Positions 8,300 through 64,000 of a DNA stretch of 64,000 nt are shown here, one piece after another. The translations under genes were made by a program, and so were the position numbers. How positions within the stretch are numbered: the first letter of the stretch is position 1; every line of letters starts with the position of its first letter. The stretch covers positions 124,001 through 188,000 of the IMG/VR virus record IMGVR_UViG_3300048438_000153. One strand, given 5' to 3'. The notes beneath the pieces were generated by a model, which saw only the letters and a list, made by a program, of their open reading frames with translations, had not been told where the DNA came from and made no database searches.

Positions 8300-9100
8300 T
8301 TAGCGACGTGAAGCTCGGAGAGCCTTAATAGCCTGAGCTTGGAGACGAGATTGTCTCTTAGTAACAGCAGTCTCGATGTCAGCCATGCGCTCCGCAAAGT
8401 TCATGAAACGCTCATGGAGGTTCATACCGCCGACCATACCACGAATAGTCGCAACAGCCTGACCGCGCTTGAGGTTAGGACCTGTGAAGGTGAACTTGAT
8501 GTTTTGAGGAGTCTGCTTAAGGACGAGAGTGTAGTCTCCAGTGCCTGACACGATAGTGTCGTCACCCATGCGTCTCCAACGCTCATTGAACAAGCCATAG
8601 TTGCTAAGAAGATCATGGACGAGGTTAAACTCAGTGGTGAGATCTACTTGACCCATGCCCGTCTCTTCCATGCCAGCATCCTCGTGAAGAGGAGAAGCAT
8701 CAGGGACATCACGAAGGCCGAGATCATAAGCTTTACGAGCAAGGAGAACCTTAACTTCGTCATACTTCATGATGGTCAGAGTGCGAGCGGGTGGGAAAAT
8801 GAGATGATACCCAACCATATCCACATAGATTTTGTGCTGACGAATGCCAAGGTCAATCACAGGATTATCATCATCAAAATCAAGAGTGGCTCTTTTAAAG
8901 CCTAGCATACGAGCAGACCTAAGAAGGTCTTTCGCATTCTTTCTCATCTCAACGAGGCTCAACCGACCCGGAGCACGCTGTCGGCGTTTCTTATTAGGAG
9001 CAACGTCCATCTGCTTTGAAGGGTAAAGGGCTTGGCGCTCAAGGTGAGCGATCCTGATTTCAAGATCAGAGAGGATTTCTGAAGCTGTTCTTCTCATCAT
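8300..9100 (-). CDS. Leader-bearing protein (MRRTASEIL leader), putative head cargo
   Basis: Starts MMRRTASEILSDLEIRIAHLERQA. Confidence 0.7.
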   Translation of the reverse strand: MMRRTASEILSDLEIRIAHLERQALYPSKQMDVAPNKKRRQRAPGRLSLVEMRKNAKDLLRSARMLGFKRATLDFDDDNPVIDLGIRQHKIYVDMVGYHLIFPPARTLTIMKYDEVKVLLARKAYDLGLRDVPDASPLHEDAGMEETGMGQVDLTTEFNLVHDLLSNYGLFNERWRRMGDDTIVSGTGDYTLVLKQTPQNIKFTFTGPNLKRGQAVATIRGMVGGMNLHERFMNFAERMADIETAVTKRQSRLQAQAIKALRASRR

Positions 9101-11865: not shown

Positions 11866-11977
11866 AAGTATTTCAGTGCTTCTTTTCGACCAATGTTTCT
11901 AGGGAGGAGAGCATCATCCCTCTGTATAATACGACACGAAGTATTTCAGTGCTTCTTTTCGACCAGTGTTTCTAGGG
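11866..11977. repeat. 39-bp direct repeat (1 mismatch)
   Basis: aagtatttcagtgcttcttttcgacca[a/g]tgtttctaggg at 11866-11904 and 11939-11977. Confidence 0.85.
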
Positions 11978-12309
11978 TAAAGATAAACAAAATTCTGCTC
12001 TCCGTCTTGATCCACCGCTATGATGACGTGAAAGCTCTCTTCCTCACCCTGAGCTGTACTCATTAAAATTTCAAGTAAGATCTGATCGTCGTCTCCATAA
12101 TCATAATCGACGTGTCTCCTGATCACATCAACATTATCGATAATAGAAAACCCTGTCTTAGTCTTGATCTTGCGCTCAATAAAACCTAAAAGATCAATCT
12201 CTTCCGCAGTTGTATAGGGGCGCATATGACTAGTGTAGCCTGATGTTTTCTCAAGCCGAGCAACTCGGACTTGAAGTTCTCTTAAGATAGATGTGGCGGT
12301 TCTTCTCAT
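11914..12309 (-). CDS. Leader-bearing protein, putative head cargo
   Basis: Starts MRRTATSILRELQVRVARLEKTS. Confidence 0.7.
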   Translation of the reverse strand: MRRTATSILRELQVRVARLEKTSGYTSHMRPYTTAEEIDLLGFIERKIKTKTGFSIIDNVDVIRRHVDYDYGDDDQILLEILMSTAQGEEESFHVIIAVDQDGEQNFVYLYPRNTGRKEALKYFVSYYTEG

Positions 12310-16933: not shown

Positions 16934-17641
16934 CTATCTAAAGCGTCTCAGTGAAGCGAACTTGTTTCTGTGGTACTCAGACAGCATACGCTGAGCCCTC
17001 GCCCTATTTACCTTGAACTTCCTCATGAGCTTCTCTTCAATCAAGTCCTCACGAAGACTCATTTTGAGCCAAGTGCGAATCTCACTGTTGACCTCAAAGG
17101 GGGGGATGAAAGCATATCTGTCTAGATCACGATTCAGGTAGTCGAAAGAGGCTTTCTTAGCTGTGAACTCGTCTGCGAGATACAACCCAAGCCCTTTTCT
17201 AACGACCTTGCGAATAACAGATTGACTTACGCCCCTGACCTTAATCTTCAACCTACGCATCACATCAACTACTTCTTTACCTGTGTTGGAAAGAAGCGTC
17301 TCTGCTGAGACAAGGTACTTAATACCAATCAATGGAGTGCTCTCGTTGCGAATGAGAACAAACTCATTACCGGGATAATCCTCGAAAACTGAGTCAGGTC
17401 TGACGTCTACTTTTCTTTTTGCTTCAGATAAAGGGACAAGAAAGTAGTCTTCAAAAGAAGAAACTGACTTACTTTCCGCGAGTTCTTCGAGGTCTAGTTC
17501 TCTTGGGTCGTAGATAGATTCTCTGAGAAATCTTTTCACGCTTGACAGGTCTGCCTCTGTTTCTGAGGCAGTGAGGTTTTCTAAGCGAGCGATCCTAATC
17601 TCTAGATCACTAAGGATTTCTGAAGCTGTTCTTCTCATCAT
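16934..17641 (-). CDS. Leader-bearing protein, putative head cargo
   Basis: First 30 aa identical to those of 17744-18307; remainder only weakly similar at best. Confidence 0.75.
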   Translation of the reverse strand: MMRRTASEILSDLEIRIARLENLTASETEADLSSVKRFLRESIYDPRELDLEELAESKSVSSFEDYFLVPLSEAKRKVDVRPDSVFEDYPGNEFVLIRNESTPLIGIKYLVSAETLLSNTGKEVVDVMRRLKIKVRGVSQSVIRKVVRKGLGLYLADEFTAKKASFDYLNRDLDRYAFIPPFEVNSEIRTWLKMSLREDLIEEKLMRKFKVNRARAQRMLSEYHRNKFASLRRFR

Positions 17642-17743: not shown

Positions 17744-18307
17744 CTAAATCTTCCTCCTAGATTCTTCTATTACCTTATCCCATTTTTCTTCGTTTGTAAG
17801 ACGACGTGAGTAGATAAATTGACCTAAGCCACTCCTCTCAAACTTTTTCTGATCTGAGTTCGGAACGCAAAACTGCAAGTCCAACTCCTCACAATATTCA
17901 CCCAAAGATCCTCTGCCTGACTTGTTTTTTAAAAGATCATCGGAGTTGGTAATGCGAGCTCCAAAGTAACTTCCTTCTCGCGGATCTCCCATGACGAAGA
18001 CAACCACCCCCCATGTCTTAACACCTCTGAGATGGCAGAAAACCATTTCATTTTCCTCAACCTTCACATAGGGCTTAACGTCTTTAAGGTGGCAGAAAAT
18101 AAGACTACGGTATGGGTTAAGGTAACTCTCCGTGTCGATTTGGTCATCTTCTAAAAGCTTCTGAAGAATCTCCGTTCTTTCGTCAAATACTTTTCTCTTG
18201 AGCCAACCCCCCAAACCAGCCTCTGTTTCTGAGGCAGTGAGGTTTTCTAGGCGAGCGATCCTAATCTCTAGATCACTAAGGATTTCTGAAGCTGTTCTTC
18301 TCATCAT
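17744..18307 (-). CDS. Leader-bearing protein, putative head cargo
   Basis: Starts MMRRTASEILSDLEIRIARLENLTASETEA. Confidence 0.75.
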   Translation of the reverse strand: MMRRTASEILSDLEIRIARLENLTASETEAGLGGWLKRKVFDERTEILQKLLEDDQIDTESYLNPYRSLIFCHLKDVKPYVKVEENEMVFCHLRGVKTWGVVVFVMGDPREGSYFGARITNSDDLLKNKSGRGSLGEYCEELDLQFCVPNSDQKKFERSGLGQFIYSRRLTNEEKWDKVIEESRRKI

Positions 18308-25494: not shown

Positions 25495-25553
25495 AACATT
25501 TTCTCCTTTGGGAAAGAACTGAGTCTGAAAGTGGAGTCACATAAAGGAATTAT

Positions 25554-26282: not shown

Positions 26283-26285
26283 GGG

Positions 26286-26672
26286 TCACTTCGCTTTCTT
26301 TTCTTTCTCGACCATAGGGGCGTAAGAATCAGTGTTCTTACCCTTAGATTTAGCGAGCTTCTGTGCGTCTGACCACGAGCCCACGCGCTCGCCATCTACG
26401 TTAGGGGCGAGCCGACCACCTACATTAGTGTCTCTCTTCATCTCGTTCTGACGTTGATCGAGCTTCGCGTTCTTTGCTCTCATCTGTTTCTTGATGCGCT
26501 CATTCTTAGTAGACCAACCGTCACCCTTGAAGATCATGTTCGTGGTCGGCTTGAAGAGCTTGAAGGTTTCTTTCCCACACTCAGGACAGGGCTGTGGGGT
26601 CTTGTACTCAGACATAGGTACTTGGCAAGAATACTCAGTGTTGCAGTCAGAACATTTGTAGTCGTAGATCAT
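26286..26672 (-). CDS. FmdB-family zinc-ribbon protein
   Basis: YDYKCSDC...CPECG...FKGDGW. Confidence 0.8.
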   Translation of the reverse strand: MIYDYKCSDCNTEYSCQVPMSEYKTPQPCPECGKETFKLFKPTTNMIFKGDGWSTKNERIKKQMRAKNAKLDQRQNEMKRDTNVGGRLAPNVDGERVGSWSDAQKLAKSKGKNTDSYAPMVEKEKKAK

Positions 26673-26689
26673 GGTTCTCTCTCTTTCTC

Positions 26690-27070
26690 TTAGAAGAAGT
26701 CTCTCAAGACGGCATAGACGTGCTTACACACTTTATGACTACCTTGAGGGTCGCGCTTAGTGGGTTCTTCTGCTGACCCTCTAGGTGTACCAAAAAGATA
26801 ATCATTCTTAAGTGCATGGAACTCACATCCTTGATACCGCCAATAAGAGCAAGTACAAGAAAGAAAGAGGTCGGGCGATGATGAGTCACCCTTTGCATCT
26901 ACAGTGACCTCATACTTATCTACAGTGAAAGTAAGGGGCTCTTTATAGACCTTCTGCTCAAACTCTGAAATCACAGCAGAGATAGACTGAGCTTTAGATA
27001 CGACAGAAGAGTCCAAACCCTCAAGGATCTGACTCTTCTGAGCTGATGTTTTAAATCGTAGGCTATTCAT
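26690..27070 (-). CDS. SWIM-type zinc finger protein
   Basis: SCTCSYWRYQG...VCKHVYAVL. Confidence 0.7.
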   Translation of the reverse strand: MNSLRFKTSAQKSQILEGLDSSVVSKAQSISAVISEFEQKVYKEPLTFTVDKYEVTVDAKGDSSSPDLFLSCTCSYWRYQGCEFHALKNDYLFGTPRGSAEEPTKRDPQGSHKVCKHVYAVLRDFF

Positions 27071-27276
27071 TTATCTAGTCTCCCTATCTCTAGTAAGAAA
27101 GACTAGATAGAAAGACTATCGCTTCGAGTCGTCTTTGTAGGACTTATAAGCCCCTACAAAGAAGAGAGAGTAGGTCATCAAGGTGGCGGAAGATAAGAGT
27201 ATTTCGATAAATCCCATTAGGATGTCTCCTGTTAATATATGTGTTTGCGTGAGGCTTTAGCAAAGGAGACAGCCTA

Positions 27277-27705
27277 ATGCAAACTTTCGTGCCGTATGCG
27301 AGTATAAAAAAATCCGCTGAATCGCTTGACCGCGCTAGATTAGGAAAACAGCGTTCTGAATCGAAGATTATCCTACAAGTCTTAGAGAGAAGGAAGCGGT
27401 CACCCGACGAGAAGTTCGGATGGAAAAACCATCCCGCAGTCCTCATGTGGGAGGGTCACGAAGACTTTCTCCGCGCCTACTCCCTAGCGATCTGCTTAGA
27501 ATGGCGTAAGAGGGGCTATAAGGACACAACCCTCCCCTTCTTCTTAGAGGGGGTCAAACCCAACCCTCAGCCCCCATCTTGGTGGGGAGATGAGAAAGTT
27601 CACGAGTCTCACCGCTCAAAGTTGATTGCAAAATTACCCGATCACTACGAGAATATATTTACTAAGACTCTTCGAGGCTTAGACTACCATTGGCCTACAC
27701 CATAA
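27277..27705 (+). CDS. Pyrimidine-dimer DNA glycosylase-like (MSMEG_6728/DenV-related) protein
   Basis: MQTFVPY...LD..RLGKQR.E...HPAVLMWEGH...PSWWG...HESHRSKL. Confidence 0.8.
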   Translation: MQTFVPYASIKKSAESLDRARLGKQRSESKIILQVLERRKRSPDEKFGWKNHPAVLMWEGHEDFLRAYSLAICLEWRKRGYKDTTLPFFLEGVKPNPQPPSWWGDEKVHESHRSKLIAKLPDHYENIFTKTLRGLDYHWPTP

Positions 27706-27716
27706 GGAGGAGATAA

Positions 27717-27788
27717 ATGTGTGATCACTCAGATGAAGAATGGCGTGATATCCTAGACGACATTCTCAATCCAGTCAGAGATGACTAG
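27717..27788 (+). CDS. 23-aa acidic micropeptide MCDHSDEEWRDILDDILNPVRDD
   Basis: Strong SD AAGGAGGAG directly after the upstream stop; below the ORF-track cutoff. Confidence 0.45.
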   Translation: MCDHSDEEWRDILDDILNPVRDD

Positions 27789-27889
27789 GGAGATAAGATA
27801 ACTGACGCTCAAGTCGAGAAAGACGACGATCAATGTCTCTAAGAACATCAGCCGATCAAGTCAGAACAATCTACTGAATAAAGGGGATG

Positions 27890-29572: not shown

Positions 29573-29864
29573 TCTAGTTGACCACCCCAATTGGAAGTTT
29601 CTAGTTGGGATGCTCATACACCCGAGCTTCAAAAAAACTCAGAGAATGAGAGTCTCACAGGAGTACACATATGAGGGTTGGTTGCCTGTATTAGAGGACA
29701 AGGCCACCCTAGCGATCTTAAGTCTAATGCTCATTGAATCAGGGGGGCTCTTGAGGTTCTCTGAGGGGTGTTACCACATCGGAGATGACTTCAAGTCTGA
29801 AAGCCTTCAGGAGATCATCTGCGAGGGGCTGATAGAGGCTTGGGATCAGTCCTCTGACTCGTAA
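29553..29864 (+). CDS. Hypothetical protein
   Basis: 103-aa ORF overlapping the upstream gene. Confidence 0.55.
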   Translation: MKKSTTDLVDHPNWKFLVGMLIHPSFKKTQRMRVSQEYTYEGWLPVLEDKATLAILSLMLIESGGLLRFSEGCYHIGDDFKSESLQEIICEGLIEAWDQSSDS

Positions 29865-30421
29865 AACTCGAAAGGAAGATCGAACTTGTCTCCATCACCA
29901 CGCCCGTCGAAGTAGCCGACCTTTACTCTGAGCTTACCTTTAGCCTCAATGATGTTGCCCTTCTCTAAGAGATCATTGCTGTAAGAGGGCTTCACGCCAT
30001 TGACAGCTACCGTGATGTGAGGGTTGTCATTCTGAACAGGTAGGTTCGTGTCGATAAGGACTGCAACACAGTTCTCATCGAAGGCGTAACCTACGATGTT
30101 AATCGTGTAAGAGTTCCCGAGAAACTGCTTGTACCTCTCAAGGTCTTTCGCCTTGCCCTTACCGCCAAGAAACTCCATCGTCATGTGGTGACTCTTAACG
30201 TCCCAACCTGTGATGCTCGGAGCGCCGTCTTGCTGACTGAGCCATGAGGTTAGATCGGTAGGGTTATCAAGAACAGCCTCGATGAAAGTCACCTTAGTGG
30301 GCTTCTTTTTCTTAGCCGCTTGCTTGACCGTAGACTCTCCTGTCACGACAGGGAGAATCTTATTACGGAGATGTGGGTTTTCGTATGCGATACGAATCAG
30401 CTTCGCTCTTAGCTCGCTCAT
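29846..30421 (-). CDS. 2H phosphoesterase with N-terminal LIRIAYENP leader
   Basis: Two HxT motifs (HHMTM, PHITV); leader MSELRAKLIRIAYENPHLRNKILPVV, then KQA. Confidence 0.75.
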   Translation of the reverse strand: MSELRAKLIRIAYENPHLRNKILPVVTGESTVKQAAKKKKPTKVTFIEAVLDNPTDLTSWLSQQDGAPSITGWDVKSHHMTMEFLGGKGKAKDLERYKQFLGNSYTINIVGYAFDENCVAVLIDTNLPVQNDNPHITVAVNGVKPSYSNDLLEKGNIIEAKGKLRVKVGYFDGRGDGDKFDLPFEFYESED

Positions 30422-30490
30422 AAGTCACCTTTTCTTTCTCTATTGAGTGCTGTCTCTGTAGACACATAAATAAAGTAAAGAGAGGGTCAA

Positions 30491-31144
30491 ATGAAGATAC
30501 TCGTGATCAGCACCACCACACATAAAGAAAACTCGACCTCAAAACTCATCTTAGAAGAGGTCATGAGTAAAATTAAGAAAGACCACGACATCGACTACAT
30601 CGACGCCGATCAGCTTCACATCGTAAAGAACCTTTCTTGCTACTCATCGGGGGGAGATAACTGTGCGTCAAAAGACGCAGGGAAGTACCGCTGTTGGGCG
30701 CACAAGCTCAGTCAAGAAAGCCCCTCAGAGTATGGGGGAAAAGACGAGATGGGGATCATATACGATGGTTTAGAGTGGTGCGATGCTGTCATCTTCGCGA
30801 CGAGTGTTCGATGGGGTAGCCACTCTGCGCTCATGCAGAAAATCTTAGAGCGCATGAACACCCTCGAAAACCGAGTCGTAGTCTACAATGAGAAGAACAC
30901 TCTTAAGGGAAAGAAATGCGGAGTCGTGGTGACAGGTCAGCACTACATGGCGCAGTCTGTGGCAGATCACCTACTGACTCAGCTCACCTTTTGGGGCTTC
31001 GAGGCTGAGTCTCGTCTCTGTTGGCAAAAGACACTCGACTTGAGCAAAGAGCAAGAGGGAGACAACAACAAAAGTCTGAAAGAATATCTTTCAAGTGATG
31101 ATGGGAAAGAACAGATAGACTCTTTCCTCAAGACCCTCCTGTGA
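30491..31144 (+). CDS. Flavodoxin-fold NAD(P)H-dependent oxidoreductase (iron-sulfur flavoprotein-like)
   Basis: MKILVIS...ENSTS; Cys cluster; DEM..IY..L...DAVIFATSVRWG; LKGKKCG. Confidence 0.8.
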   Translation: MKILVISTTTHKENSTSKLILEEVMSKIKKDHDIDYIDADQLHIVKNLSCYSSGGDNCASKDAGKYRCWAHKLSQESPSEYGGKDEMGIIYDGLEWCDAVIFATSVRWGSHSALMQKILERMNTLENRVVVYNEKNTLKGKKCGVVVTGQHYMAQSVADHLLTQLTFWGFEAESRLCWQKTLDLSKEQEGDNNKSLKEYLSSDDGKEQIDSFLKTLL

Positions 31145-31751
31145 AGGCATCCCAACGCTTCTGCACGTTATCCCAATTGATCTTCCCTACAATGGCCTTA
31201 AGAAAACCTTCTCTGTCGCTCTTGTAGTCGAGATAGTAAGCGTGTTCCCATAGGTCGATACAGAGAAGAGGGAAATGACCCCTCATGAGGGGAGTGAGCT
31301 GATTATCAAGTGACTGAACTCTTAGTCCTGTGTCAGTGACGATCAGCCAAACCCAACCGCTCCCGAAGTGGCTCTTTCCTGACTCTATGAGTTTCTTCTT
31401 AAGCTCATAGATGCCTCCGAAGTCTTTCTCTATCTGCGCTCCAAAAGACCCACTGAAATAGGGTTCTTTCGTATAGGGAGAAATAGATTTCCAAAAGAGG
31501 TTATGAGTGTAGACACCGCCTCCGAAGTTGACGACATCTTTCTTAACATCTAGGGGAATGTATTTCGGGTTGGCGAGGAGCGCGCCGAGCCCCCCTACTC
31601 TTTCTAGGAGGGTAGGGTATGAGGAGAGAGTCTTATTGAGTTTCTCGACATATCCTTTGTGGTGTTTTCTGTGGTGCTCCCACATAGCTTCCTTACCGAT
31701 GATCGGCTCTAGGTCTTCGTAGTCGAAAGGTAGTGGAGGTAAGCGCACCAT
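31128..31751 (-). CDS. sodA: Fe/Mn superoxide dismutase (Mn-type signatures)
   Basis: LPPLPFDYEDLEP, HHRKHHKGYV, GGG..HNLFW, FGSGWVWL, NQ, DLWEHAYY. Confidence 0.93.
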   Translation of the reverse strand: MVRLPPLPFDYEDLEPIIGKEAMWEHHRKHHKGYVEKLNKTLSSYPTLLERVGGLGALLANPKYIPLDVKKDVVNFGGGVYTHNLFWKSISPYTKEPYFSGSFGAQIEKDFGGIYELKKKLIESGKSHFGSGWVWLIVTDTGLRVQSLDNQLTPLMRGHFPLLCIDLWEHAYYLDYKSDREGFLKAIVGKINWDNVQKRWDAFTGGS

Positions 31752-31771: not shown

Positions 31772-32929
31772 TTAAAAGATGATGTCGAAATCTAAGCTTG
31801 CCGTTTTAGCAGATACTTCGACATCAACTTCTGCGTCAGTTCCCGTAACACTCTCTTCGGTGGGCTTTGCTGAACCTTTACTCTTACCAAAGAGATACTT
31901 TCTCACTTCGTCAGCATCTTTACCTTCACTTAACATTGCCTCTGCTTTCGCCTTCTTTTTAGGGTCTTTTATGCCGTCAAGGAGCTTCTTTTTCTTATCC
32001 TCTTCAGACACTTCTTTCTTCGCGCCATCTGCGCCATCTGACTTAGGAGCTGAACCACCCTCTGACTTAGGAGCTGAATCACCCTCTGACTTGTCGCCCT
32101 CAGAGTCGCTGGATCCGATCTCTTTCTTAGCTAAGGTAAATAAGGGCTTAACCCAAAGTTCAGTTCTCTTTCCTATAGCGTATTCTCTAGTCTCTTCTTT
32201 GTTCATTAATGTGTTCCATTGAACCTCCTCGCTACCCCTACCACTATCACGGTCATAGCTCGGATCTTTAAGAAGCGTCTTCCCATTAAGATAATCATTC
32301 CATTTATCTATAAGAGCCTTCAATCTCGGTGTTTGAGAGATTTTCTTACCACCTCTGATCATAGCTTTGACCTTCTTGATAATCGCGTTCCTTCTCACTT
32401 TATTCGTTGAGTCATCCTTGTATTCGTTCTCAAGCCTCGCCAGCTCGGCTTTAGGATTTAAGTTTTGCGCTTCAAGTCGCTCTTGCTTCCTATCGCTTTT
32501 TCTGCCCTCTGCTTTCGGAGCTCTGTCCTGAGTTCTCTTGAGATCCCTCCCTCGTAGCTTCGCATCTTGTTGAGCTGCCGCAGAAATAACTCTCTTCAAA
32601 AGAGGATAAGAGTCAATAAGATTTGTTAAAGAAGCCCCCCCCACACTAGCAACACGATTATTGTGATGCGACTCTAGAGCCTCTGTGTATAACTCAACGG
32701 TGTCTGAGGCGTAAGGGGTCTGAGTAGCCCATTTGTGTGTAGCGAAAGCCCTCTGCCAATACTCTGAAGGCTGACTCGCAACACGAGATCCCCTCTCAGA
32801 AAGAAAAGCTACGCGAGCATTATGCTCCCTCTCCGCCTCCGCCATAGAAAGAAGGTAGTCACCCGTCACCTGACTGACCGCACCATGTGGAATCTCCGCA
32901 GAGATCTTAATCAAAGCCGTAATGTTCAT
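31772..32929 (-). CDS. Linker-motif-rich protein, putative head cargo
   Basis: RVAFL, RVAS x2, terminal KTAS-LDFDIIF; 24-bp repeats (SEGDSAPK/SEGGSAPK). Confidence 0.65.
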   Translation of the reverse strand: MNITALIKISAEIPHGAVSQVTGDYLLSMAEAEREHNARVAFLSERGSRVASQPSEYWQRAFATHKWATQTPYASDTVELYTEALESHHNNRVASVGGASLTNLIDSYPLLKRVISAAAQQDAKLRGRDLKRTQDRAPKAEGRKSDRKQERLEAQNLNPKAELARLENEYKDDSTNKVRRNAIIKKVKAMIRGGKKISQTPRLKALIDKWNDYLNGKTLLKDPSYDRDSGRGSEEVQWNTLMNKEETREYAIGKRTELWVKPLFTLAKKEIGSSDSEGDKSEGDSAPKSEGGSAPKSDGADGAKKEVSEEDKKKKLLDGIKDPKKKAKAEAMLSEGKDADEVRKYLFGKSKGSAKPTEESVTGTDAEVDVEVSAKTASLDFDIIF

Positions 32930-50526: not shown

Positions 50527-52077
50527 TTAGTTAGAGAGACAAGCTCTAATATCAGCGAGCGCGTAGTGACTCCGAGGAACTTGGAGGAGCTGAAGAAGCT
50601 GAGGTCGATACTTAGGGTTCTCGTAAGCGAGCTTAACGACAGCAGTCTTAGCTACAAAGGCGTCCTCTCCAAGCTCGTCCTTAACTACTTCTACTTCTCT
50701 CTTAGCTTCCTCTCCCTTTTCTTTCTTAGCCTCAGAAACAGCTTTATCAAGGTTCTTCTTAACCTCAGCGTGGAAAGCCTCAGTCTGCTTTTTCATATCG
50801 GCCTGAAATGCTTTTAAGTCAAAGCCGTTCGGAGTGACAAACTGAGAAAGGTAGTCAATCTGATCAGCATCAATTGTTGAATAATACTCAATGATTTTCT
50901 GCTTGAGAGATTCAATGTCCTCTTCAGAAGCACTCTTAAACCAGCTCTTTAAACCTGACACACCTTTACTGCCCTTCCCCACTCCTTTCTGAGTTAAACC
51001 TCCAATACCCTCAGCGATACCTTTAACTCCTTTTAAAGCGATTGCACTAACACCCGCAACGGAGGTTACAGCCATTGCGACTGCTTGTGCTCCAGCCACC
51101 GCACCTCCTGCTGAAAGTCCGACTGCACTTCCAAATGCTTCTATGCCCATATCAGCAAAACTTGAGCTCGCTTCTGAAGCACCCTCAGCTTGAGCGTCAT
51201 TAAGACCATTCTTCTTAAAAATGGAATGATGGGCTTTTTTTATCTTATTTCGACTCTCTTCCCCCCACTTACCAATCGCCTTTAATTTTGTTTGTAACTC
51301 TTCAGCACTCTCAGGAATAGATTCGGTGAGAGTTTTTCCCGCTTGACTAAGAGTATTACTACCCTTTTCATCTAGCTTACTCGCCTCCTCAAGAGCCATA
51401 TCTATCGCGATACCTACGTCTTGAGAGCTGTCGAGAACTAACTGTCTCTTCACTTCAGCAGAAATCTCTGAAGCTAACTGAGCTCCGCCCTCTTTAAGAG
51501 CAGACACAGCTTTCTCCTCACCCTCAGTCAGTTGCTTTTGCTTGTTCCACTTTTCTGCAAGATCTGCGATAGCTTTCTTAGCTTGTTCATGGAGACTAGA
51601 TGCCTCATCAAGCGCATAACCTATTGCAGTAGAAACGGCTAGTGATCCCTCCATAGCCTCAGAGATTTCGACCCTTTGGTTTTGCAAAGACCTCTCAAAC
51701 TCAGATTGACTCTCAATAGGTACACCTATCGCAGTCTCTAGTTTAGACTTCTTTTTGTCTTTTTTGTTCTTGTTGTCTTTCTTATTCTTGTCGTCCTTCT
51801 TATTGCGCTTATCCGCTCTGTTCTGTTTTCTCTTCTCTCCCTTGTTACCCCTATTCTTAGTCTTCTTCGCCTTAGACCTACCTGCCTCTTTAAAGATGTC
51901 TCCCGTGAAGAAAGGAAGCACATAATCCCTGATCTCAGGGTTCGCATAAGCGAGCTTGATGACCCTCGAAATAAGATCTTCTTCTGAAGCTGTCCTGAGA
52001 GAGATCAGAGGGAGGATATCGCCTCTAGTTTCCTCGTTTTCGTAAGCAGTACGGATCAAGTATTCTCTAATGTTCAT
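50527..52077 (-). CDS. Protein with three xAY(E/A)N motifs and a Gly/Ala-rich hydrophobic segment, putative head/ejection protein
   Basis: LIRTAYENEETR, VIKLAYANPEIR, VVKLAYENPKYR; AVGLSAGGAVAGAQAVAMAVTSVAGVSAIAL. Confidence 0.65.
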   Translation of the reverse strand: MNIREYLIRTAYENEETRGDILPLISLRTASEEDLISRVIKLAYANPEIRDYVLPFFTGDIFKEAGRSKAKKTKNRGNKGEKRKQNRADKRNKKDDKNKKDNKNKKDKKKSKLETAIGVPIESQSEFERSLQNQRVEISEAMEGSLAVSTAIGYALDEASSLHEQAKKAIADLAEKWNKQKQLTEGEEKAVSALKEGGAQLASEISAEVKRQLVLDSSQDVGIAIDMALEEASKLDEKGSNTLSQAGKTLTESIPESAEELQTKLKAIGKWGEESRNKIKKAHHSIFKKNGLNDAQAEGASEASSSFADMGIEAFGSAVGLSAGGAVAGAQAVAMAVTSVAGVSAIALKGVKGIAEGIGGLTQKGVGKGSKGVSGLKSWFKSASEEDIESLKQKIIEYYSTIDADQIDYLSQFVTPNGFDLKAFQADMKKQTEAFHAEVKKNLDKAVSEAKKEKGEEAKREVEVVKDELGEDAFVAKTAVVKLAYENPKYRPQLLQLLQVPRSHYALADIRACLSN

Positions 52078-58993: not shown

Positions 58994-59872
58994 TTAGCGA
59001 GTAACGGTGAGGCGAGCAAGACCGCGTGGGTTGTACGCGCCGATACCCAAATTCTCAAAGACTGAGAAACCGATGGTGCGAGCCTTCGGATCGTCAGCAG
59101 AAAGAACAGTAAGCTCAGTACGGACAGGGATGCGTCCGAACATCTCAGGCTCACAGCAGACGTACACAGTGCCGACAGGAACTAGACGGCTAGTGATGAT
59201 CTGTGCGCCCCAAAGAGTAGCCTGAAGACCAGTCTTAAGGAGCGCTGCTTGGCTCTCGATGTCGAGAATGTCGCGACCAAACTTACGGATGTCAGCGTAG
59301 TCACGAGCGTTCATGAAGACGCGAGAGACACGGAGGTCGTGACGCTCGATAAGAGCGTATGCGTCAGCGAGAACAGCACCGTTAAGAGGAGCGATGACAG
59401 GAATGTCAGCGTTAGTCTGACCAGGGAGACTGTCGAAGCCTTGAGTCGCAACCGCGTCGAGGATAGCGAATACACGCTCGTCCTCAGCCGCCTGAATCTG
59501 AGCGCGAGCCAAGTCTTGAGCCCTCTCGATCAGATCGAAGCGACGCTCCTTGATCTGAGTGAGTGGGATCTCAGGGTTTGATGCGATCTCGAAAAGAGGG
59601 AAGATCACACGACGTGGCTTGGTGATAGCGAGGATGTTCTCGCCCTCTTCACCTACCACGAACGCGGTCACGTCAGGGTCTTTGTCGTAGATCGGAAGCG
59701 CACCATCAGGAAGTTGCTCTACGAGGAAAGTCTTACGACCAACGCTCGTATAGTCACGACGGAGACGGAGAGGTTGTGTCATTGAAGCGGCTAGCTTCGC
59801 ACGACCTTGTGGGGTCTTAATGTAGTCAGCAATGATCTTTTGCTTTACTGCGTTATCGACGTTGTTACTCAT
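58994..59872 (-). CDS. Major capsid protein (HK97 fold)
   Basis: 292 aa; order protease-scaffold-decoration-MCP followed by a terminator; IQAAEDERVFAILD spine helix, VFMNARDYADI, LWGAQIITS. Confidence 0.82.
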   Translation of the reverse strand: MSNNVDNAVKQKIIADYIKTPQGRAKLAASMTQPLRLRRDYTSVGRKTFLVEQLPDGALPIYDKDPDVTAFVVGEEGENILAITKPRRVIFPLFEIASNPEIPLTQIKERRFDLIERAQDLARAQIQAAEDERVFAILDAVATQGFDSLPGQTNADIPVIAPLNGAVLADAYALIERHDLRVSRVFMNARDYADIRKFGRDILDIESQAALLKTGLQATLWGAQIITSRLVPVGTVYVCCEPEMFGRIPVRTELTVLSADDPKARTIGFSVFENLGIGAYNPRGLARLTVTR

Positions 59873-60639: not shown

Positions 60640-62649
60640 TTAACCGAAGTACTTGCTGACGTCGGGAGCTGACTCCCAAAGCTTAGAAAGCTCGTCAGAA
60701 GCAGAGCTTGCTTCACGGCTGATGTTACCGAGTGTCTTAACAGACGCTTGGCGAGCCTGAGTCTGAGGGCGGAAAGAAGCTGATTTCTGAGTAGTAGCGG
60801 TAGCCTCCTCTTCAGACGCCTCCTCCTCAGATGCCTCTTCATCAGCGGCTTGGAAGATACGAGCGAGCTTAGGATCGACATCGACATTATCTGAAGCCAT
60901 GTGAAGACCCATTACGTCCTCAGCCATGTCCTCAGCCATATCCTCAGCCATATCCTCAGCCATCATGGTTGCCTCGTGATCCTCAGCCATCATGGTTGCC
61001 TCGTGATCCTCAGCCATATGATGCATCGCCATTTCTTCTTCAGCAGTCATGTCGAATTGGCTAGGATCATTCTGATCAGCCATCATCATCTCTGCTTCCA
61101 TCTCAGCGAGCATCTCATTAAGCATTGCTTGCTCTTCAGAAGCTAGACGCATCTCATCGAAATGAGCTTTCTTCTTCTTAGGAACACGTTGACCTTCAAC
61201 ATTGTGCTTGTAAGGGCGAGGTCTTGCCTTCTGACCCTGTGGGTTTGACTTTGAAGGCCAACGCTCAGGGTTGTTCACATAGTAGGTGTGGTTGTAACTA
61301 GCCTTTGATCCAGGCTCTTGCAACAATTCTTTGCGAGCTTTAGTCTTAGGTCGTTTACCCTTCTGACCACTGCGATTCCAATTCCAAATAGCCTTTCTAT
61401 CTTCATCAGAAAGATAGTCTTGCCAATCGGGATTAGCCTTACCGTAATCCTTAATGCCCTTACCGCGACGACCCCAAGCCTCTTTGTCCTCAGCCATCAT
61501 GTCCATCTCAGCCATGATCTCTGCGAACTCTTCATCAGAAAGAATATCCTCAGCCATCAACTCGTCGTTGGCTTTTTTCTCTTTTTTTCCTTCTGATTGA
61601 GGAACACCCCAAAAGAGATGTTTGTACTTCTGATAGTACTCTTTGTTGTGCTCTTGCTTGTCCTCATCAGTCCAACCCGTAGTTCCGGGAGAAGAGCGGT
61701 ACTGACCTCTCATCTTGGAGTCCATATACTCAAATTTGTCTAGAGTTTTTCCGTAGGGCTCTTGCGTGTGAGGAGATTTAAGTTTGCCTGGATCCGTGAA
61801 TGACTTCCATCCATCTTCTTTCTTGCCCCAAGCACCTTTAGCAACGATGTTCATCTCAGCCATGATCTCAGCCATGCGGTCTGCATCGCCCATGTGAGAA
61901 GCCTCGTGCATCATCTCAGCGAGAATGGCCATGTCCTCTGACATCATTTCTGAGGCGAGTTTCTTAGTAGGACCTTCGCCCTCTTCCTCGTCGAGAACCT
62001 CAACGCTCTCGTCGTCGCCCTCATGACCTGTCTCTTGCTGAACTACGTCCTCTGCCATGCGACGCATTTTAGAAGCGAGACGGGCGTTAGCCGCTTTGAG
62101 CATGGCGATTTCTTCAGCCATGTCTTCTTCAGCCATCATCTCAGCCATGACGTTATCTACGCCCTCGTCATCACCCTCGTAGCCTGTAGCCTCTTGCATC
62201 GCATCCTCTCCAAGAAAGTCTGAAGCGATACGCTGGATCTTGGCATTGATCTGACGTGATGGGAGATCCATGTAACGAAGGGCAAGATCCTCGATCTCAT
62301 CCTGTGATGCAGTCCTACCGAGACGGCTCTCAGCAATCTCGATGCACTTAGAAGCCTTGCGCTCCATAGCCTTGCGGAGATTCTGCTCGTAGAGGTCAGA
62401 AGTCTCCTCATAGTCTGAAATGATGTCCTCAGTAGCTGCGGGATGATCTGCTTCCCAACTGTATGAAGCGGGGGCAGGTCCTGAGCGGTAAGGACCTTCG
62501 TGAACGCCCTCGCCAAATTCTGAGTCGATGCCATAAGCGTCAACTGAGGGCTGTGCTTGTGATGCGGGATGACCGAAGCTCTCGAAGCCCTGATCATCAT
62601 AACCTGGTAGGCTAGAAGTGTTAGCCCTACGGAAACTATTCCTAGACAT
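60640..62649 (-). CDS. Putative scaffold/core protein with MAE repeats
   Basis: Between protease and capsid genes; very acidic and Met-rich with many MAE(D) units; probable start MSRNSFRRA with SD AAGGA. Confidence 0.65.
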   Translation of the reverse strand: MSRNSFRRANTSSLPGYDDQGFESFGHPASQAQPSVDAYGIDSEFGEGVHEGPYRSGPAPASYSWEADHPAATEDIISDYEETSDLYEQNLRKAMERKASKCIEIAESRLGRTASQDEIEDLALRYMDLPSRQINAKIQRIASDFLGEDAMQEATGYEGDDEGVDNVMAEMMAEEDMAEEIAMLKAANARLASKMRRMAEDVVQQETGHEGDDESVEVLDEEEGEGPTKKLASEMMSEDMAILAEMMHEASHMGDADRMAEIMAEMNIVAKGAWGKKEDGWKSFTDPGKLKSPHTQEPYGKTLDKFEYMDSKMRGQYRSSPGTTGWTDEDKQEHNKEYYQKYKHLFWGVPQSEGKKEKKANDELMAEDILSDEEFAEIMAEMDMMAEDKEAWGRRGKGIKDYGKANPDWQDYLSDEDRKAIWNWNRSGQKGKRPKTKARKELLQEPGSKASYNHTYYVNNPERWPSKSNPQGQKARPRPYKHNVEGQRVPKKKKAHFDEMRLASEEQAMLNEMLAEMEAEMMMADQNDPSQFDMTAEEEMAMHHMAEDHEATMMAEDHEATMMAEDMAEDMAEDMAEDVMGLHMASDNVDVDPKLARIFQAADEEASEEEASEEEATATTQKSASFRPQTQARQASVKTLGNISREASSASDELSKLWESAPDVSKYFG
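60916..61017. repeat. Coding tandem repeats (12-bp MAED and 27-bp MAEDHEATM units)
   Basis: Repeated tcctcagccat units. Confidence 0.85.
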
Positions 62650-62674
62650 AGGATTTCCTTTCTGCATGAAGGGC

Positions 62675-64000
62675 TTACCGCCCATGAACGAATGTGATAA
62701 GCTTGGAAAGTCTTACCAAGCGAAGTGAGTCTTTGCGAGTTAACTTTGAACCATGACACTCCTCAGCGTCAGAGATAAAGCTAGCCACTTTATTATACCT
62801 GTCTGCTGAGTCTATTTGACTAGCAATACGGTACAGGTAAGAAGGTAGGTAGACGTCGAAACGATCATTGACGAGTCTGATGTTATCGACTGCCTCTTTC
62901 TTAGAGGAGGCGATCTTCACAGCGGTGTCAAGAGCTGAGAAATAGAGATTCTTTCTCTTTATCTTTCTCTTACTCTTGCCCTCTTTAATGATTGTATCGT
63001 CAGCGGTAGTAGGGTCGCCTGTTGCGGGTACATTAACCGCTTTCTGAGCGAGCTCCTCTTTGATCTCCTTTTCGAGCTTCTTTCTCATGCGACCAACGAG
63101 AGCTTCAGTCACTACGCCCTCAAGTTGATCGAGAATAGAATCAGGAGTCTCTTCTTTCTTAGTGGATTCACCCTCTTCATCGCCCTCGCCATCTCCGAAG
63201 TCGAAAGGACCTGCGAGATGGGATGAAGCAGACTTGCTCAACCACTGCGGAGGAACTTGATTAAGTTTTTCCTCTTGTGGGTTGGCGTCAGCGGAAGGGA
63301 TTTCAAGAGTATTCCTAGCGACCGCGCCCTTAAAGGCAGGTATGGCAACCCAAGAAGCCTCAATGAAGGTTACGCCACCTGTTTCCCCCGTAGTCTCATG
63401 ACCACAAAGCTCGGCAACACGGTGCTTGTTTCCATTCTCATCGAAGAAAACATTACCCTTCTCATACTTAACGTGTCGGCACATCTGAGGCTCATCAGCC
63501 GCGACGTGACCGCACTTGGTGCAGATGGTGAAATCGACAGAACAACCCATCGACATACCGTTCATTTCACCCGATAAGATTTGTCTAACGAGATCTTCGT
63601 GCTTTCTATCTGTGGCTACAAGAATATCCACATAGATAGATTCACCAATATCTCGCATAACAGCATCAATGATACGCCCTTTAGAGAGCTCTTCAACTTG
63701 AACGTGTTCAACAAAGTTATGCGCCCCCACAAACGTCTTATAAGACTTCTTAATAACGCCCCTAGACCAACAGTCGAGGTTGTTATTGATGTACTTATCT
63801 GTCTCGGAGGTGACTCGATAGTCTGCATACTTTCTGTTAATATTCTGACCCTCTTCCTCAACTGAACCTGTCTTTACATTAGGGACAGAAACAGCGTCTA
63901 CGGAGCACACAATCGTAGAGTGTGTGAGTAGAAACCGATCAGGAGTGAAGGGCTCGCCTAAAAGCTCTTCTGCTTTCTTCTTAAGGCTCGAATCGAGGCG
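62675..64000 (-). CDS. Prohead maturation protease (HK97/assemblin-type, with Zn-binding insert), 5' end outside window
   Basis: Frame open to 64000; FVEH...GRIIDA, GMSMG, CxxC..C.H insert, FIEASWVAIPA. Confidence 0.8.
   Translation of the reverse strand, partial: RLDSSLKKKAEELLGEPFTPDRFLLTHSTIVCSVDAVSVPNVKTGSVEEEGQNINRKYADYRVTSETDKYINNNLDCWSRGVIKKSYKTFVGAHNFVEHVQVEELSKGRIIDAVMRDIGESIYVDILVATDRKHEDLVRQILSGEMNGMSMGCSVDFTICTKCGHVAADEPQMCRHVKYEKGNVFFDENGNKHRVAELCGHETTGETGGVTFIEASWVAIPAFKGAVARNTLEIPSADANPQEEKLNQVPPQWLSKSASSHLAGPFDFGDGEGDEEGESTKKEETPDSILDQLEGVVTEALVGRMRKKLEKEIKEELAQKAVNVPATGDPTTADDTIIKEGKSKRKIKRKNLYFSALDTAVKIASSKKEAVDNIRLVNDRFDVYLPSYLYRIASQIDSADRYNKVASFISDAEECHGSKLTRKDSLRLVRLSKLITFVHGR

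What the first reader, a model, noticed from the sequence alone, without database searches (positions are those of the whole stretch)
29846..30421. Leader-tagged 2H phosphoesterase, candidate injected anti-defence enzyme
Motif-B leader plus KQA precedes a compact domain with two HxT motifs. Established: phage 2H enzymes include Acb1, which degrades CBASS cyclic nucleotides, and RNA-repair phosphodiesterases. Inference: virion delivery would let it act before phage genes are expressed.
Basis: inference. Interest (0 to 1): 0.65.

Follow-up and report, generated by a model that had tools for sequence, protein, structure and literature searches.

The report
Leader-tagged RNA-end phosphodiesterase of marine jumbo phage
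A marine jumbo phage encodes a small 2H phosphoesterase of the RNA-end-healing (CNPase/tRNA-ligase CPD) type behind a short helical leader that the same phage clade also puts on many unrelated proteins; the leader looks like a capsid-loading tag removed by the head protease, so the enzyme is probably delivered with the DNA, but this rests on sequence evidence only.

Summary
Window 29846-30421 (minus strand) is a 191-aa ORF with a helical leader (res 1-28), a disordered basic linker containing K-Q-A-A (res 33-36), and a compact 2H domain with HHMT (78-81) and HIT (135-137).

The enzyme is not Acb1-like. It passes Pfam PF08302 (tRNA-ligase CPD). Its model matches CNPase (Z 13.1) and fungal Trl1 CPD (Z 11.1), well above Acb1 (6.6) and LigT (6.3). 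In other phages the same domain is fused to polynucleotide-kinase-like, CCA-adding and 'Swiss-army-knife' RNA-repair HAD domains.

The leader is a modular tag. It occurs on four proteins in this genome, including a SAM-lyase-family protein, and on 11 unrelated proteins in a related 485-kb phage. Two sister leader classes bring the total to 18 of 259 genes.

All leader classes end in [KR]-x-A-[S/A/G]. This motif is 10- to 13-fold enriched in the scaffold-like protein and the prohead protease, so it is probably the protease site. Leader genes, the 2H gene included, carry the promoter-like motif of structural genes.

Virion loading and injection are therefore plausible but unproven, and the substrate is unknown. 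I rate it a new variant of a known kind (T4 CTS/internal proteins).

The parts
29846..30421 (-). ORF P0001, 191 aa: leader + linker + 2H phosphoesterase domain + conserved acidic C-terminal tail
30338..30421 (-). Leader-B, res 1-28: two short helices (3-14, 16-26), core [LI]-[IV]-[RK]-[LI]-A-[YH]-x-N-P-x-[LIM]-R-x-x-[ILV]-L-P
   Evidence: AF2 model pLDDT 79-86 in this part. HMM and alignment hits to other proteins. Conserved at protein level, not DNA level.
30314..30325 (-). K-Q-A-A (res 33-36) in the disordered basic linker: a variant of the [KR]-x-A-[S/A/G] junction motif and the candidate prohead-protease site
   Evidence: pLDDT<50 at res 30-36. Orthologues have K-E-A-A, R-E-A-S and K-T-A-A at this place. 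Motif statistics.
29882..30292 (-). 2H phosphoesterase domain (res 44-180), CNPase/Trl1-CPD type
   Evidence: PF08302 above cut-off. VIA-align Z 13.1 to mouse CNPase, 11.1 to fungal Trl1 CPD.
30179..30190 (-). First catalytic motif H78-H79-M80-T81
   Evidence: read from the sequence; invariant
30011..30019 (-). Second catalytic motif H135-I136-T137
   Evidence: read from the sequence; invariant
30470..30475 (-). CTTTAT promoter-like motif 54 nt upstream of the ATG, the class found upstream of structural genes
50527..52077 (-). P0020, 516 aa, in the head module: two N-terminal leader-B copies (51997-52074, 51904-51981), a K-rich basic stretch, an A/G-rich hydrophobic stretch and a C-terminal leader-B copy (50581-50658). 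Candidate internal/ejection protein.
62675..63910 (-). Head maturation protease. A longer reading of the ORF may start beyond the window end. Carries five [KR]-x-A-S motifs.
   Evidence: phrog_18299 E 1e-15. Homologous to Tunturi_5 gp331, annotated head maturation protease. Motif counts.
60640..62685 (-). P0022, 681 aa, acidic M/A/E-rich scaffold-like protein between the protease and MCP genes, with nine [KR]-x-A-S motifs
58994..59872 (-). Major head protein (HK97 type)
   Evidence: phrog_2522 E 4e-51
8300..9100 (-). Leader-A protein (N-terminus M-M-R-R-T-A-S-E-I-L-S-D-L-E-I-R-I-A-H-L-E-R-Q-A)
11914..12309 (-). Leader-A protein
16934..17641 (-). Leader-A protein
17744..18307 (-). Leader-A protein
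31772..32929 (-). 385-aa charged low-complexity protein two genes from the 2H gene. It has three [KR]-x-A-S motifs and the CTTTAT motif. Its orthologue in a related phage carries an internal leader-B.

Best explanation
P0001 is a late-expressed cargo protein of a marine jumbo myovirus.

Shown:
- It is a catalytically intact 2H phosphoesterase of the CNPase/Trl1-CPD clade.
- It is preceded by a ~28-residue helical leader and a disordered basic linker.
- The leader is a modular tag shared by unrelated proteins of this phage clade.
- Every leader class ends in [KR]-x-A-[S/A/G].
- That motif is strongly enriched in the scaffold-like protein and in the prohead protease.
- Genes with leaders are enriched for the promoter-like motif of structural genes.

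Inferred:
- The leader docks the protein into the assembling procapsid.
- The prohead protease cuts at K-Q-A|A (about res 35/36) and frees a ~155-aa enzyme.
- The enzyme is packed with the DNA and ejected into the host at infection.
- There it hydrolyses 2',3'-cyclic phosphodiesters, most likely the cyclic-phosphate ends left on tRNA/RNA by metal-independent host nucleases, or free 2',3'-cyclic nucleotides.
- In that role it would act as an immediate counter-defence, alongside a tagged SAM-lyase-family enzyme that would act against SAM-dependent restriction.
For: Enzyme type:
- PF08302 scores 32.7 bits against a cut-off of 23.
- The AF2 model has pLDDT 88.6.
- VIA-align gives Z 13.1 (rmsd 2.5 A, 135 aa) to CNPase and Z 11.1 to the Trl1 kinase-CPD structure 6u05. 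The next matches fall to Z 6.8 or lower.
- HHMT, PHIT and S-N are invariant across all architectures.
- The same domain is fused to an AAA_33 kinase, to PolyA_pol/CCA-adding domains and to HAD_SAK_1 RNA-repair domains.
- The own genome has a separate AAA_33 kinase homologous to the fused kinases (blastp E 1e-13 to 5e-10).

Leader as a modular tag:
- Four proteins of the own genome carry it.
- Eleven proteins in LR745208.1 carry it, E 9e-12 to 5e-7; at least six carry it at the very N-terminus, several more have it internal to the longest reading frame, and the C-terminal parts are unrelated.
- Extra carriers occur in two related contigs, plus P0025.
- Leaders A, B and C together are on 18 of 259 genes.
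- Identical residues are encoded by different codons (14 of 17 in one pair).
- Phages whose MCP is 96-97% identical carry the 2H enzyme behind leader C instead of B.

Protease link:
- [KR]-x-A-S occurs 9 times in the scaffold-like protein against 0.68 expected (0 of 300 shuffles reach it), and 5 times in the protease against 0.44.
- The same pattern holds in LR745208.1: 6 against 0.61 and 3 against 0.47.
- The motif sits at leader/cargo junctions.
- In P0001 it lies in the disordered linker.

Timing:
- CTTTAT lies 39-62 nt upstream of the baseplate, tail-fibre and head-decoration/MCP genes, and of P0001 (d=54).
- Replication genes have a different motif.
- Leader genes carry CTTTAT in 8 of 18 cases against 17 of 241 for the rest, Fisher p 5.6e-5.
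- The 2H genes of relatives have a one-base variant of the element, GTTTAT within TAGATTGTTTATA.

Second cargo:
- The SAM-lyase family hit is PF23780, 30.6 bits against a cut-off of 28. The Atlas look-alikes agree.

Precedent:
- T4 internal proteins are diverse anti-restriction proteins that share only a capsid targeting sequence (PMC3012670).
- SPN3US has short N-terminal propeptides of 20-24 residues on head proteins (PMC10052503).
Against: - There is no virion proteome, no N-terminal mapping and no enzyme assay; every step after 'modular tag' is inference.
- P0001 has K-Q-A-A, not the commonest K/R-x-A-S, and lies 20-30 kb from the head genes.
- The CTTTAT motif also precedes a UvrD-like helicase gene, so the class is not purely structural.
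- P0001's site lacks the A/T-rich upstream element seen at many other sites.
- A CPD-type product (2'-phosphate) would need a Trl1-type ligase and Tpt1 for repair. No RNA ligase, RtcB, Tpt1 or CCA-adding enzyme was found in the 88%-complete record.
- Why RNA healing would be needed in the first seconds of infection is unclear.
- [KR]-x-A-S also resembles a basophilic kinase site (R-x-x-S).
- Tunturi_5 and Bacillus phage G, the nearest cultured relatives by MCP, have no leader-B.
Confidence: 0.45

Rival explanations
1. One reading: an injected Acb1-like enzyme that degrades cyclic oligonucleotide immune signals (CBASS cGAMP and others, type III CRISPR cyclic oligoadenylates) before phage genes are expressed.
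For: Acb1 has a 2H fold with an HxT/HxT tetrad and a metal-independent mechanism that passes through a cyclic-phosphate intermediate (PMC9117128). Acb1 structures and models do appear among the matches (Z 6.6; BFVD E about 1e-2). 2H domains in virion-delivered polyvalent proteins were proposed to degrade signalling nucleotides (PMC5512222). No RNA ligase is found in the genome.
Against: No hit to Pfam Acb1 (PF23474) was listed at E<=1 (the model is in the library). The match to CNPase/Trl1-CPD is far stronger (Z 13.1 and 11.1 against 6.6). The fusion partners of this domain family are RNA-repair domains. PADLOC and PHROGs gave nothing. Immune signals are made after infection is sensed, so delivery in the first second is not obviously needed.
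Confidence: 0.15
2. A cytoplasmic late RNA-repair enzyme. The leader is not a capsid tag but a docking or oligomerisation helix, for example for assembly with the AAA_33 kinase, with P0020 or with another hub. The [KR]-x-A-S motif is something else, such as a phosphorylation site.
For: The domain family is embedded in RNA-repair architectures. A homologous kinase is encoded separately. Leader-B also occurs internally and at a C-terminus (P0021, P0020), which is unusual for a propeptide. The motif fits R-x-x-S. The structure-based test of leader binding to MCP gave no verdict and so adds nothing either way.
Against: This does not explain why the motif is concentrated in the scaffold-like protein and the protease in two phages. 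It does not explain why leader genes share the structural-gene promoter motif. It does not explain why a SAM-lyase-family enzyme and about 15 unrelated small proteins would need the same dock, or why a multi-leader protein with a basic and a hydrophobic stretch sits in the head module.
Confidence: 0.25
3. The leader is only shared ancestry of recently duplicated genes or a repeated DNA cassette, with no function of its own.
For: Two leader-A genes (16934-17641 and 17744-18307) are tandem and share near-identical upstream DNA.
Against: Leader-B copies share residues but not codons. The downstream domains are unrelated. The leader persists across phages whose 2H orthologues have diverged to 52-68% identity.
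Confidence: 0.05

Closest known systems
T4 capsid targeting sequence (CTS) and internal proteins IPI*/IPII/IPIII and Alt
   Same: A short conserved N-terminal tag on otherwise unrelated proteins, loading into the prohead core, removal by the prohead protease, and ejection with the DNA. The cargo includes anti-restriction proteins (PMC3012670; PMC5512222).
   Different: There is no detectable sequence relation. The leader here is about 26-30 residues and helical, comes in three classes, and can be repeated, internal or C-terminal. The putative cut is [KR]-x-A|[S/A/G], whereas T4 and phiKZ-type proteases cut after Glu (and my own knowledge). The cargo here is enzymatic (CPD-type 2H, SAM-lyase family). 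Nothing has been shown experimentally.
CNPase / fungal-plant tRNA ligase (Trl1) CPD domain, Pfam PF08302
   Same: Best Pfam and best structural match, both HxT motifs, and association with a P-loop polynucleotide-kinase-like domain in relatives.
   Different: It is much smaller (about 140 aa against about 210). It stands alone behind a leader. No Trl1-type ligase or Tpt1 is found in the genome. It has a clade-specific acidic C-terminal tail.
Acb1 (anti-CBASS 2H nuclease)
   Same: A compact phage-encoded 2H phosphoesterase with an HxT/HxT tetrad.
   Different: It is not in the Acb1 Pfam family. The structural match is weak (Z 6.6, 110 aa, rmsd 3.8 A). The domain contexts differ.
2H domains of phage polyvalent proteins fused to MuF or portal domains (Iyer et al. 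2017)
   Same: These are predicted virion-packaged, injected 2H phosphoesterases that do not associate with RNA ligases.
   Different: In those proteins delivery is inferred from covalent fusion to a head protein. Here it is inferred from a short cleavable leader. The large fusions of this 2H family are RNA-repair multi-domain proteins without MuF or portal domains.
Giant-phage head proteolysis (phiKZ, 201phi2-1, SPN3US)
   Same: Many head and ejection proteins carry N-terminal propeptides removed at a short consensus motif that also occurs many times in the abundant ejection (E) proteins. Some of the propeptides are only 20-24 residues long.
   Different: Those propeptides are not one shared, recognisable leader family. 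The motif there is A/S/G-x-E.

Membership tests
2H phosphoesterase superfamily | Two H-x-T/S motifs | tested here: met
   H79-M-T81 and H135-I-T137, conserved in the alignments
2H phosphoesterase superfamily | Bilobed alpha+beta fold with the two motifs facing a central cleft | tested here: met
   AF2 model pLDDT 88.6. All top PDB and BFVD matches are 2H enzymes. The cleft geometry itself was not inspected.
CNPase / Trl1-CPD clade (PF08302) | Profile match above the curated threshold | tested here: met
   E 7e-8, 32.7 bits against a cut-off of 23. Only res 104-154 align to the profile.
CNPase / Trl1-CPD clade (PF08302) | Closest structural neighbours are CNPase, RICH and Trl1 CPD | tested here: met
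   Z 13.1, 9.9 and 11.1, then a drop to 6.8 or lower
CNPase / Trl1-CPD clade (PF08302) | Hydrolyses 2',3'-cyclic phosphate to 2'-phosphate | not testable with these tools
   Needs an enzyme assay that determines product regiochemistry
CNPase / Trl1-CPD clade (PF08302) | Works with a 5'-OH kinase and a 2'-phosphate-dependent ligase | tested here: inconclusive
   Kinase fusions occur in relatives and the own genome has a homologous kinase. PF09414, PF09511, PF01139 and PF01885 were not found in the 88%-complete record.
Acb1 (PF23474) | Profile match to the Acb1 family | tested here: not met
   Not among the families listed at E<=1 for P0001. The family is in the library, since it hits another protein.
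Acb1 (PF23474) | Structural similarity above that to other 2H clades | tested here: not met
   7t26 Z 6.6, level with LigT and plant CPDase and far below CNPase
Acb1 (PF23474) | Cleaves 3'-5' bonds of cyclic oligonucleotides | not testable with these tools
   Needs an assay
LigT / ThpR (PF02834) | Profile match above the threshold | tested here: not met
   E 0.043, 14.4 bits against a cut-off of 23.3; Z 6.3
CTS-type capsid-targeted, protease-processed internal proteins | One short N-terminal tag shared by unrelated cargo proteins of the same phage | tested here: met
CTS-type capsid-targeted, protease-processed internal proteins | The phage encodes a prohead protease, and the tag/cargo junction carries the protease's site | tested here: inconclusive
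   The protease is present. The junction motif [KR]-x-A-[S/A/G] is enriched in the scaffold-like protein and the protease. Cleavage itself was not observed.
CTS-type capsid-targeted, protease-processed internal proteins | Expressed with the late/structural genes | tested here: inconclusive
   A shared promoter-like motif with a statistical association. No transcript data exist.
CTS-type capsid-targeted, protease-processed internal proteins | Present in the virion and ejected into the host | not testable with these tools
   No cultured member and no proteome

The most novel reading that the evidence does not exclude
A very widespread clade of marine jumbo myoviruses uses a family of interchangeable helical leader peptides. 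There are three classes, they sit on about 7% of genes, and each ends in a [KR]-x-A|S-type protease site. The leaders load a large and mostly unknown set of proteins into the capsid for co-injection. The set includes an RNA-end-healing CPD and a SAM lyase. If so, the leader is a sequence handle that reads out the injected effector and counter-defence repertoire of uncultured phages directly from metagenomes.
Probability: 0.4. Interest if true: 0.75.

Novelty: new variant of a known kind. Interest (0 to 1): 0.6.

Why it matters
Proteins injected with phage DNA act before any phage gene is expressed. They are hard to find because they usually share nothing recognisable. A conserved leader plus junction motif would mark such cargo in thousands of uncultured marine jumbo-phage contigs. 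It would give a ready list of candidate counter-defence proteins, most with no known domain. It would also offer a portable tag for loading foreign proteins into these capsids, as the T4 CTS does. For the enzyme itself, a virion-delivered CPD-type 2H phosphoesterase would imply that 2',3'-cyclic phosphate RNA ends or nucleotides matter at the very start of infection. That is not established for any phage.

Tried and rejected
- Complex prediction of the MCP (alignment A3) with leader res 1-45 (A1): no verdict (ipSAE 0.00, controls not run). This is no evidence either way.
- PHROGs and PADLOC scans of P0001: nothing.
- PDB sequence searches with the protein and with the profile: only chance-level hits.
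- blastn of the neighbourhood against GenBank phages: nothing. tblastn found one 38%-identical hit in a 595-kb uncultured phage.
- Searches of the own record for RNA ligases (PF09414, PF09511), Tpt1, CCA-adding enzyme and RtcB: none. For PF09511 the control genomes did not ring either, so that blank is uninformative.
- Leader-B search in Tunturiibacter phage Tunturi_5 and Bacillus phage G: none. In two relatives that carry leader-C: none.
- Word-based search with leader res 1-40: only three candidates, one of them a new cargo.
- Most leader-bearing proteins have no Pfam domain. One has a WGR domain.
- The SAM-lyase-like protein has no PDB sequence hit and only an identical copy in IMG/VR, so it was not folded.
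- A/S/G-x-E (phiKZ type) and L-x-E (T4 type) were considered as the cleavage motif. They were dropped because many junctions lack Glu, whereas [KR]-x-A-[S/A/G] is general.
- No RNA sequencing run holds the region.
- The large representative-protein search was not used, because the family scans had settled the family.
Full report
**Setting.** The window is bases 124001-188000 of a 275,102-bp IMG/VR virus record that CheckV rates 88% complete. It is a jumbo myovirus. The window holds:
- a head maturation protease (62675-63910, phrog_18299);
- a 681-aa acidic scaffold-like protein (60640-62685);
- an HK97-type major head protein (58994-59872, phrog_2522, E 4e-51);
- a tail sheath homologue (38010-42809).

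The MCP is 47% identical to that of Tunturiibacter phage Tunturi_5 and 38% identical to that of Bacillus phage G. It is 88-97% identical in the best-listed members of a family of more than 2000 metagenomic protein clusters. Near-identical DNA occurs in seawater metagenomes of many studies.

**The observation.** The ORF at 29846-30421 lies on the minus strand and encodes 191 aa. The AlphaFold model, built on 19 homologues, has mean pLDDT 88.6. It shows:
- two short helices (res 3-14 and 16-26);
- a disordered basic linker (pLDDT<50 at res 30-36) that contains K-Q-A-A;
- a compact alpha+beta domain (res 44-180);
- a conserved acidic tail.

The HxT motifs are H79-M-T81 and H135-I-T137.

**What the enzyme is.**
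- Pfam places it in PF08302, the tRNA-ligase cyclic phosphodiesterase family (32.7 bits against a cut-off of 23). LigT is below threshold and no Acb1 hit is listed.
- Foldseek and VIA-align rank the CNPase catalytic domain first (Z 13.1, rmsd 2.5 A, 135 residues). The CPD domain of fungal Trl1 follows at Z 11.1 and RICH at 9.9.
- After a clear gap come plant CPDase (6.8), Acb1 (6.6) and LigT (6.3).
- In BFVD the best matches are giant-virus proteins, among them Trl1-like 'RNA ligase' multi-domain proteins. Acb1 entries appear only at E about 1e-2.

Ninety-two IMG/VR loci encode relatives. In them the same domain, with invariant HHMT, PHIT and S-N, occurs in these forms:
- bare (125-138 aa);
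- fused to an AAA_33 P-loop kinase;
- fused to PolyA_pol/CCA-adding enzymes;
- fused to the HAD_SAK_1 domain of 'Swiss-army-knife' RNA-repair proteins (E 3e-39);
- at the end of giant GNAT-CCA-2H-2H proteins.

The own genome encodes a separate 184-aa AAA_33 kinase homologous to the fused kinases. No RNA ligase, RtcB, Tpt1 or CCA-adding enzyme was found.

The domain is therefore an RNA-end-healing-type 2',3'-cyclic phosphodiesterase. Its actual substrate and product are untested.

**The leader is a modular tag.** An HMM of the orthologues' leaders finds three other proteins in the genome:
- P0020 (window 50527-52077), a head-module protein. It has two N-terminal copies and one C-terminal copy, a lysine-rich stretch and an Ala/Gly-rich hydrophobic stretch.
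- A 217-aa protein whose C-terminal domain passes the Pfam threshold for the SAM-lyase family (PF23780, 30.6 bits against 28). Its Atlas look-alikes are SAM-lyase/DUF3293 clusters.
- A basic low-complexity protein with an internal copy.

The 485-kb uncultured phage LR745208.1 has an MCP 88.6% identical to the window's. It has 11 leader-B proteins (E 9e-12 to 5e-7). At least six carry the leader at the very N-terminus, and several others have it internal to the longest reading frame. Their C-terminal parts are unrelated and without known domains. Two related contigs add further carriers. A word search found one more cargo protein.

A second leader class (A, M-R-R-T-A-S-E-I-L-x-x-L-E-x-R-[IV]-A-R-L-E) heads at least 11 proteins of this genome. 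A third class (C) heads one. Together the leaders are on 18 of 259 predicted genes.

Conservation is at the protein level. In 2H orthologues, 14 of 17 identical residues use different codons.

Four contigs whose MCP is 96-97% identical to the window's carry the 2H enzyme behind leader C instead of leader B. The leaders therefore seem interchangeable on the same cargo and capsid.

**Link to the head protease.** All leader classes end in the same kind of junction: E-K-Q-A, E-R-T-A, E-R-K-A, L-K-E-A, V-K-Q-A, F-K-E-A, T-R-Q-A, followed by S, A or G. Genome-wide, [KR]-x-A-S is concentrated in a few proteins:

| Protein | Observed | Expected from shuffling |
|---|---|---|
| Scaffold-like protein | 9 | 0.68 (0 of 300 shuffles reach it) |
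| Prohead protease | 5 | 0.44 |
| 866-aa protein (G000 197986-200586) | 10 | 0.98 |
| 284-aa protein (G000 205439-206293) | 5 | 0.31 |
| 180-aa protein (G000 208078-208620) | 4 | 0.17 |
| Two of the leader-A proteins (98865-99959, 140934-141641) | 3 each | 0.24-0.27 |

The protease and scaffold-like proteins of LR745208.1 show the same enrichment. The motif sits at leader/cargo junctions:
- R-V-A-S and K-E-A-S in the SAM-lyase-like protein;
- R-T-A-S and K-E-A-G in P0020;
- K-P-A-S immediately before the first strand of the leader-C 2H enzymes;
- K-Q-A-A in P0001, with R-E-A-S in two orthologues.

A short motif that is repeated many times in the scaffold and present in the protease itself is the usual signature of a prohead-protease site, as in T4 and the phiKZ/SPN3US group. 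The Ala|Ser core also recalls the (V/L/I)-x-A|S sites of herpesvirus assemblin, to which phage prohead proteases are structurally related. That comparison is from my own knowledge and was not tested here. I infer that leader proteins are substrates of the prohead protease and hence are inside the prohead. This is inference; a kinase-site reading (R-x-x-S) is not excluded.

**Timing.** Three promoter-like motif classes separate by function:
- a long motif at the genome ends upstream of small genes;
- TTCTGATAT[AG] upstream of the DprA-like, helicase, DNA polymerase and UvsX-like genes;
- CTTTAT, 39-62 nt upstream of the baseplate wedge, the 1832-aa tail fibre, the head-decoration/MCP operon and other large genes.

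CTTTAT precedes 25 genes where about 6 are expected. P0001 has CTTTAT at -54. Leader genes are enriched for it (8 of 18 against 17 of 241, Fisher p 5.6e-5). The leader-C 2H genes of relatives carry TAGATTGTTTATA, with the one-base variant GTTTAT, the same element as leader-A genes here. The class also includes a UvrD-like helicase gene, so 'late' is a label and not a proof.

**Most likely mechanism.** The protein is made with the structural proteins. It docks in the procapsid through its helical leader. It is trimmed at K-Q-A|A and packed with the DNA, then ejected into the host. There the roughly 155-aa CPD-type enzyme opens 2',3'-cyclic phosphates, either on RNA ends made by metal-independent host nucleases or on free 2',3'-cyclic nucleotides, in parallel with a co-delivered SAM lyase. 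My confidence is about 0.9 for the enzyme class, 0.85 for the modular tag, 0.55 for capsid loading and processing, and 0.45 for the whole chain. The main rivals are a cytoplasmic RNA-repair role with a non-capsid docking helix (0.25) and an Acb1-like signal-degrading role (0.15).

**Comparison with what is known.** It works like the T4 capsid targeting sequence system, in which diverse anti-restriction internal proteins share only the tag. It also works like the propeptide-processed ejection proteins of giant phages. Virion-delivered 2H domains were predicted before, as fusions to MuF or portal domains in polyvalent proteins. 2H enzymes of jumbo phages were discussed as specialists for 2',3'-cyclic phosphates.

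The new points are:
- this leader family with its three classes;
- the [KR]-x-A|S-type junction;
- its spread in an abundant marine clade;
- the nature of two of its cargoes.

I rate it a new variant of a known kind, and all of it is predicted.

**Limits.** The binding test between leader and MCP gave no verdict. No transcript or proteome data exist. The record is incomplete, so absent genes are weak evidence. Gene calls for the genome-wide statistics were a simple longest-ORF heuristic.

Noticed in passing
whole genome G000; examples at window 57553 (-), G000 5777, 8262, 266841, 273411: Three promoter-like motif classes sort by gene function. A roughly 40-nt motif (TTGAGGTATTGGTGAGGTAACAGG...) occurs 11 times near both genome ends. 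TTCTGATAT[AG] lies upstream of replication and recombination genes. CTTTAT lies upstream of structural genes.
   Followed up: partly
G000:C1:264770-265423 (+) = L008: A leader-B-tagged protein of the SAM-lyase family (PF23780 above cut-off), with R-V-A-S and K-E-A-S right after the leader. It is a second candidate injected counter-defence enzyme, directed against SAM-dependent restriction.
   Followed up: partly
G000:C1:197986-200586 (-), 205439-206293 (-), 208078-208620 (-): Three further proteins are very rich in [KR]-x-A-S (10, 5 and 4 sites against 1 or fewer expected). The 284-aa one has the repeats K-K-A-S-F-Y-D-D-E-I and R-R-A-S-F-Y-D-D-E-I. They are candidate head-internal protease substrates.
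   Followed up: no
window 30491-31144 (+) and 31128-31751 (-): Beside the 2H gene lie what look, by eye, like a flavodoxin/NADPH-FMN-reductase-like gene and an Fe/Mn superoxide dismutase gene. These domain assignments were not run through a family scan.
   Followed up: no
window 52137-54785 (-): An 882-aa head-module protein whose C-terminus matches Dps-like DNA-binding families (DUF5856, phrog_3636, phrog_858). It may be a DNA-associated internal head protein.
   Followed up: no
window 58994-59872 (-): The MCP is unusually conserved. The 120 best-listed homologues are 88-97% identical, out of more than 2000 clusters at E<1e-5, and come from contigs of up to 438 kb. More than 569 IMG/VR loci encode a relative. 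The clade is abundant in seawater metagenomes.
   Followed up: partly
window 23386-24060, 24079-24777, 24790-25494 (-): Three tandem paralogues of about 225-234 aa with similar N-termini (...V-T-D-L-[FS]-P-N-x-S-Q...). One has the CTTTAT motif. Function unknown.
   Followed up: no
L071 (IMGVR_UViG_3300050014_000823), 1997-aa ORF: A giant GNAT + CCA-adding + LigT/Acb1-like 2H + CPD-type 2H protein. Two different 2H clades sit in one RNA-repair polyprotein.
   Followed up: no
G000:C1:25925-26448: The 275-kb record has only two tRNA genes (Arg-CCT and Arg-TCT). They lie beside a cluster of small leader-A genes (24935-27843).
   Followed up: no
window 12369-13364 (-): By eye this looks like an actin/ParM-like ATPase gene (N-terminus ...G-L-D-I-G-T-M-N-L-V...). 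It lies among leader-A genes and was not verified with a family scan.
   Followed up: no
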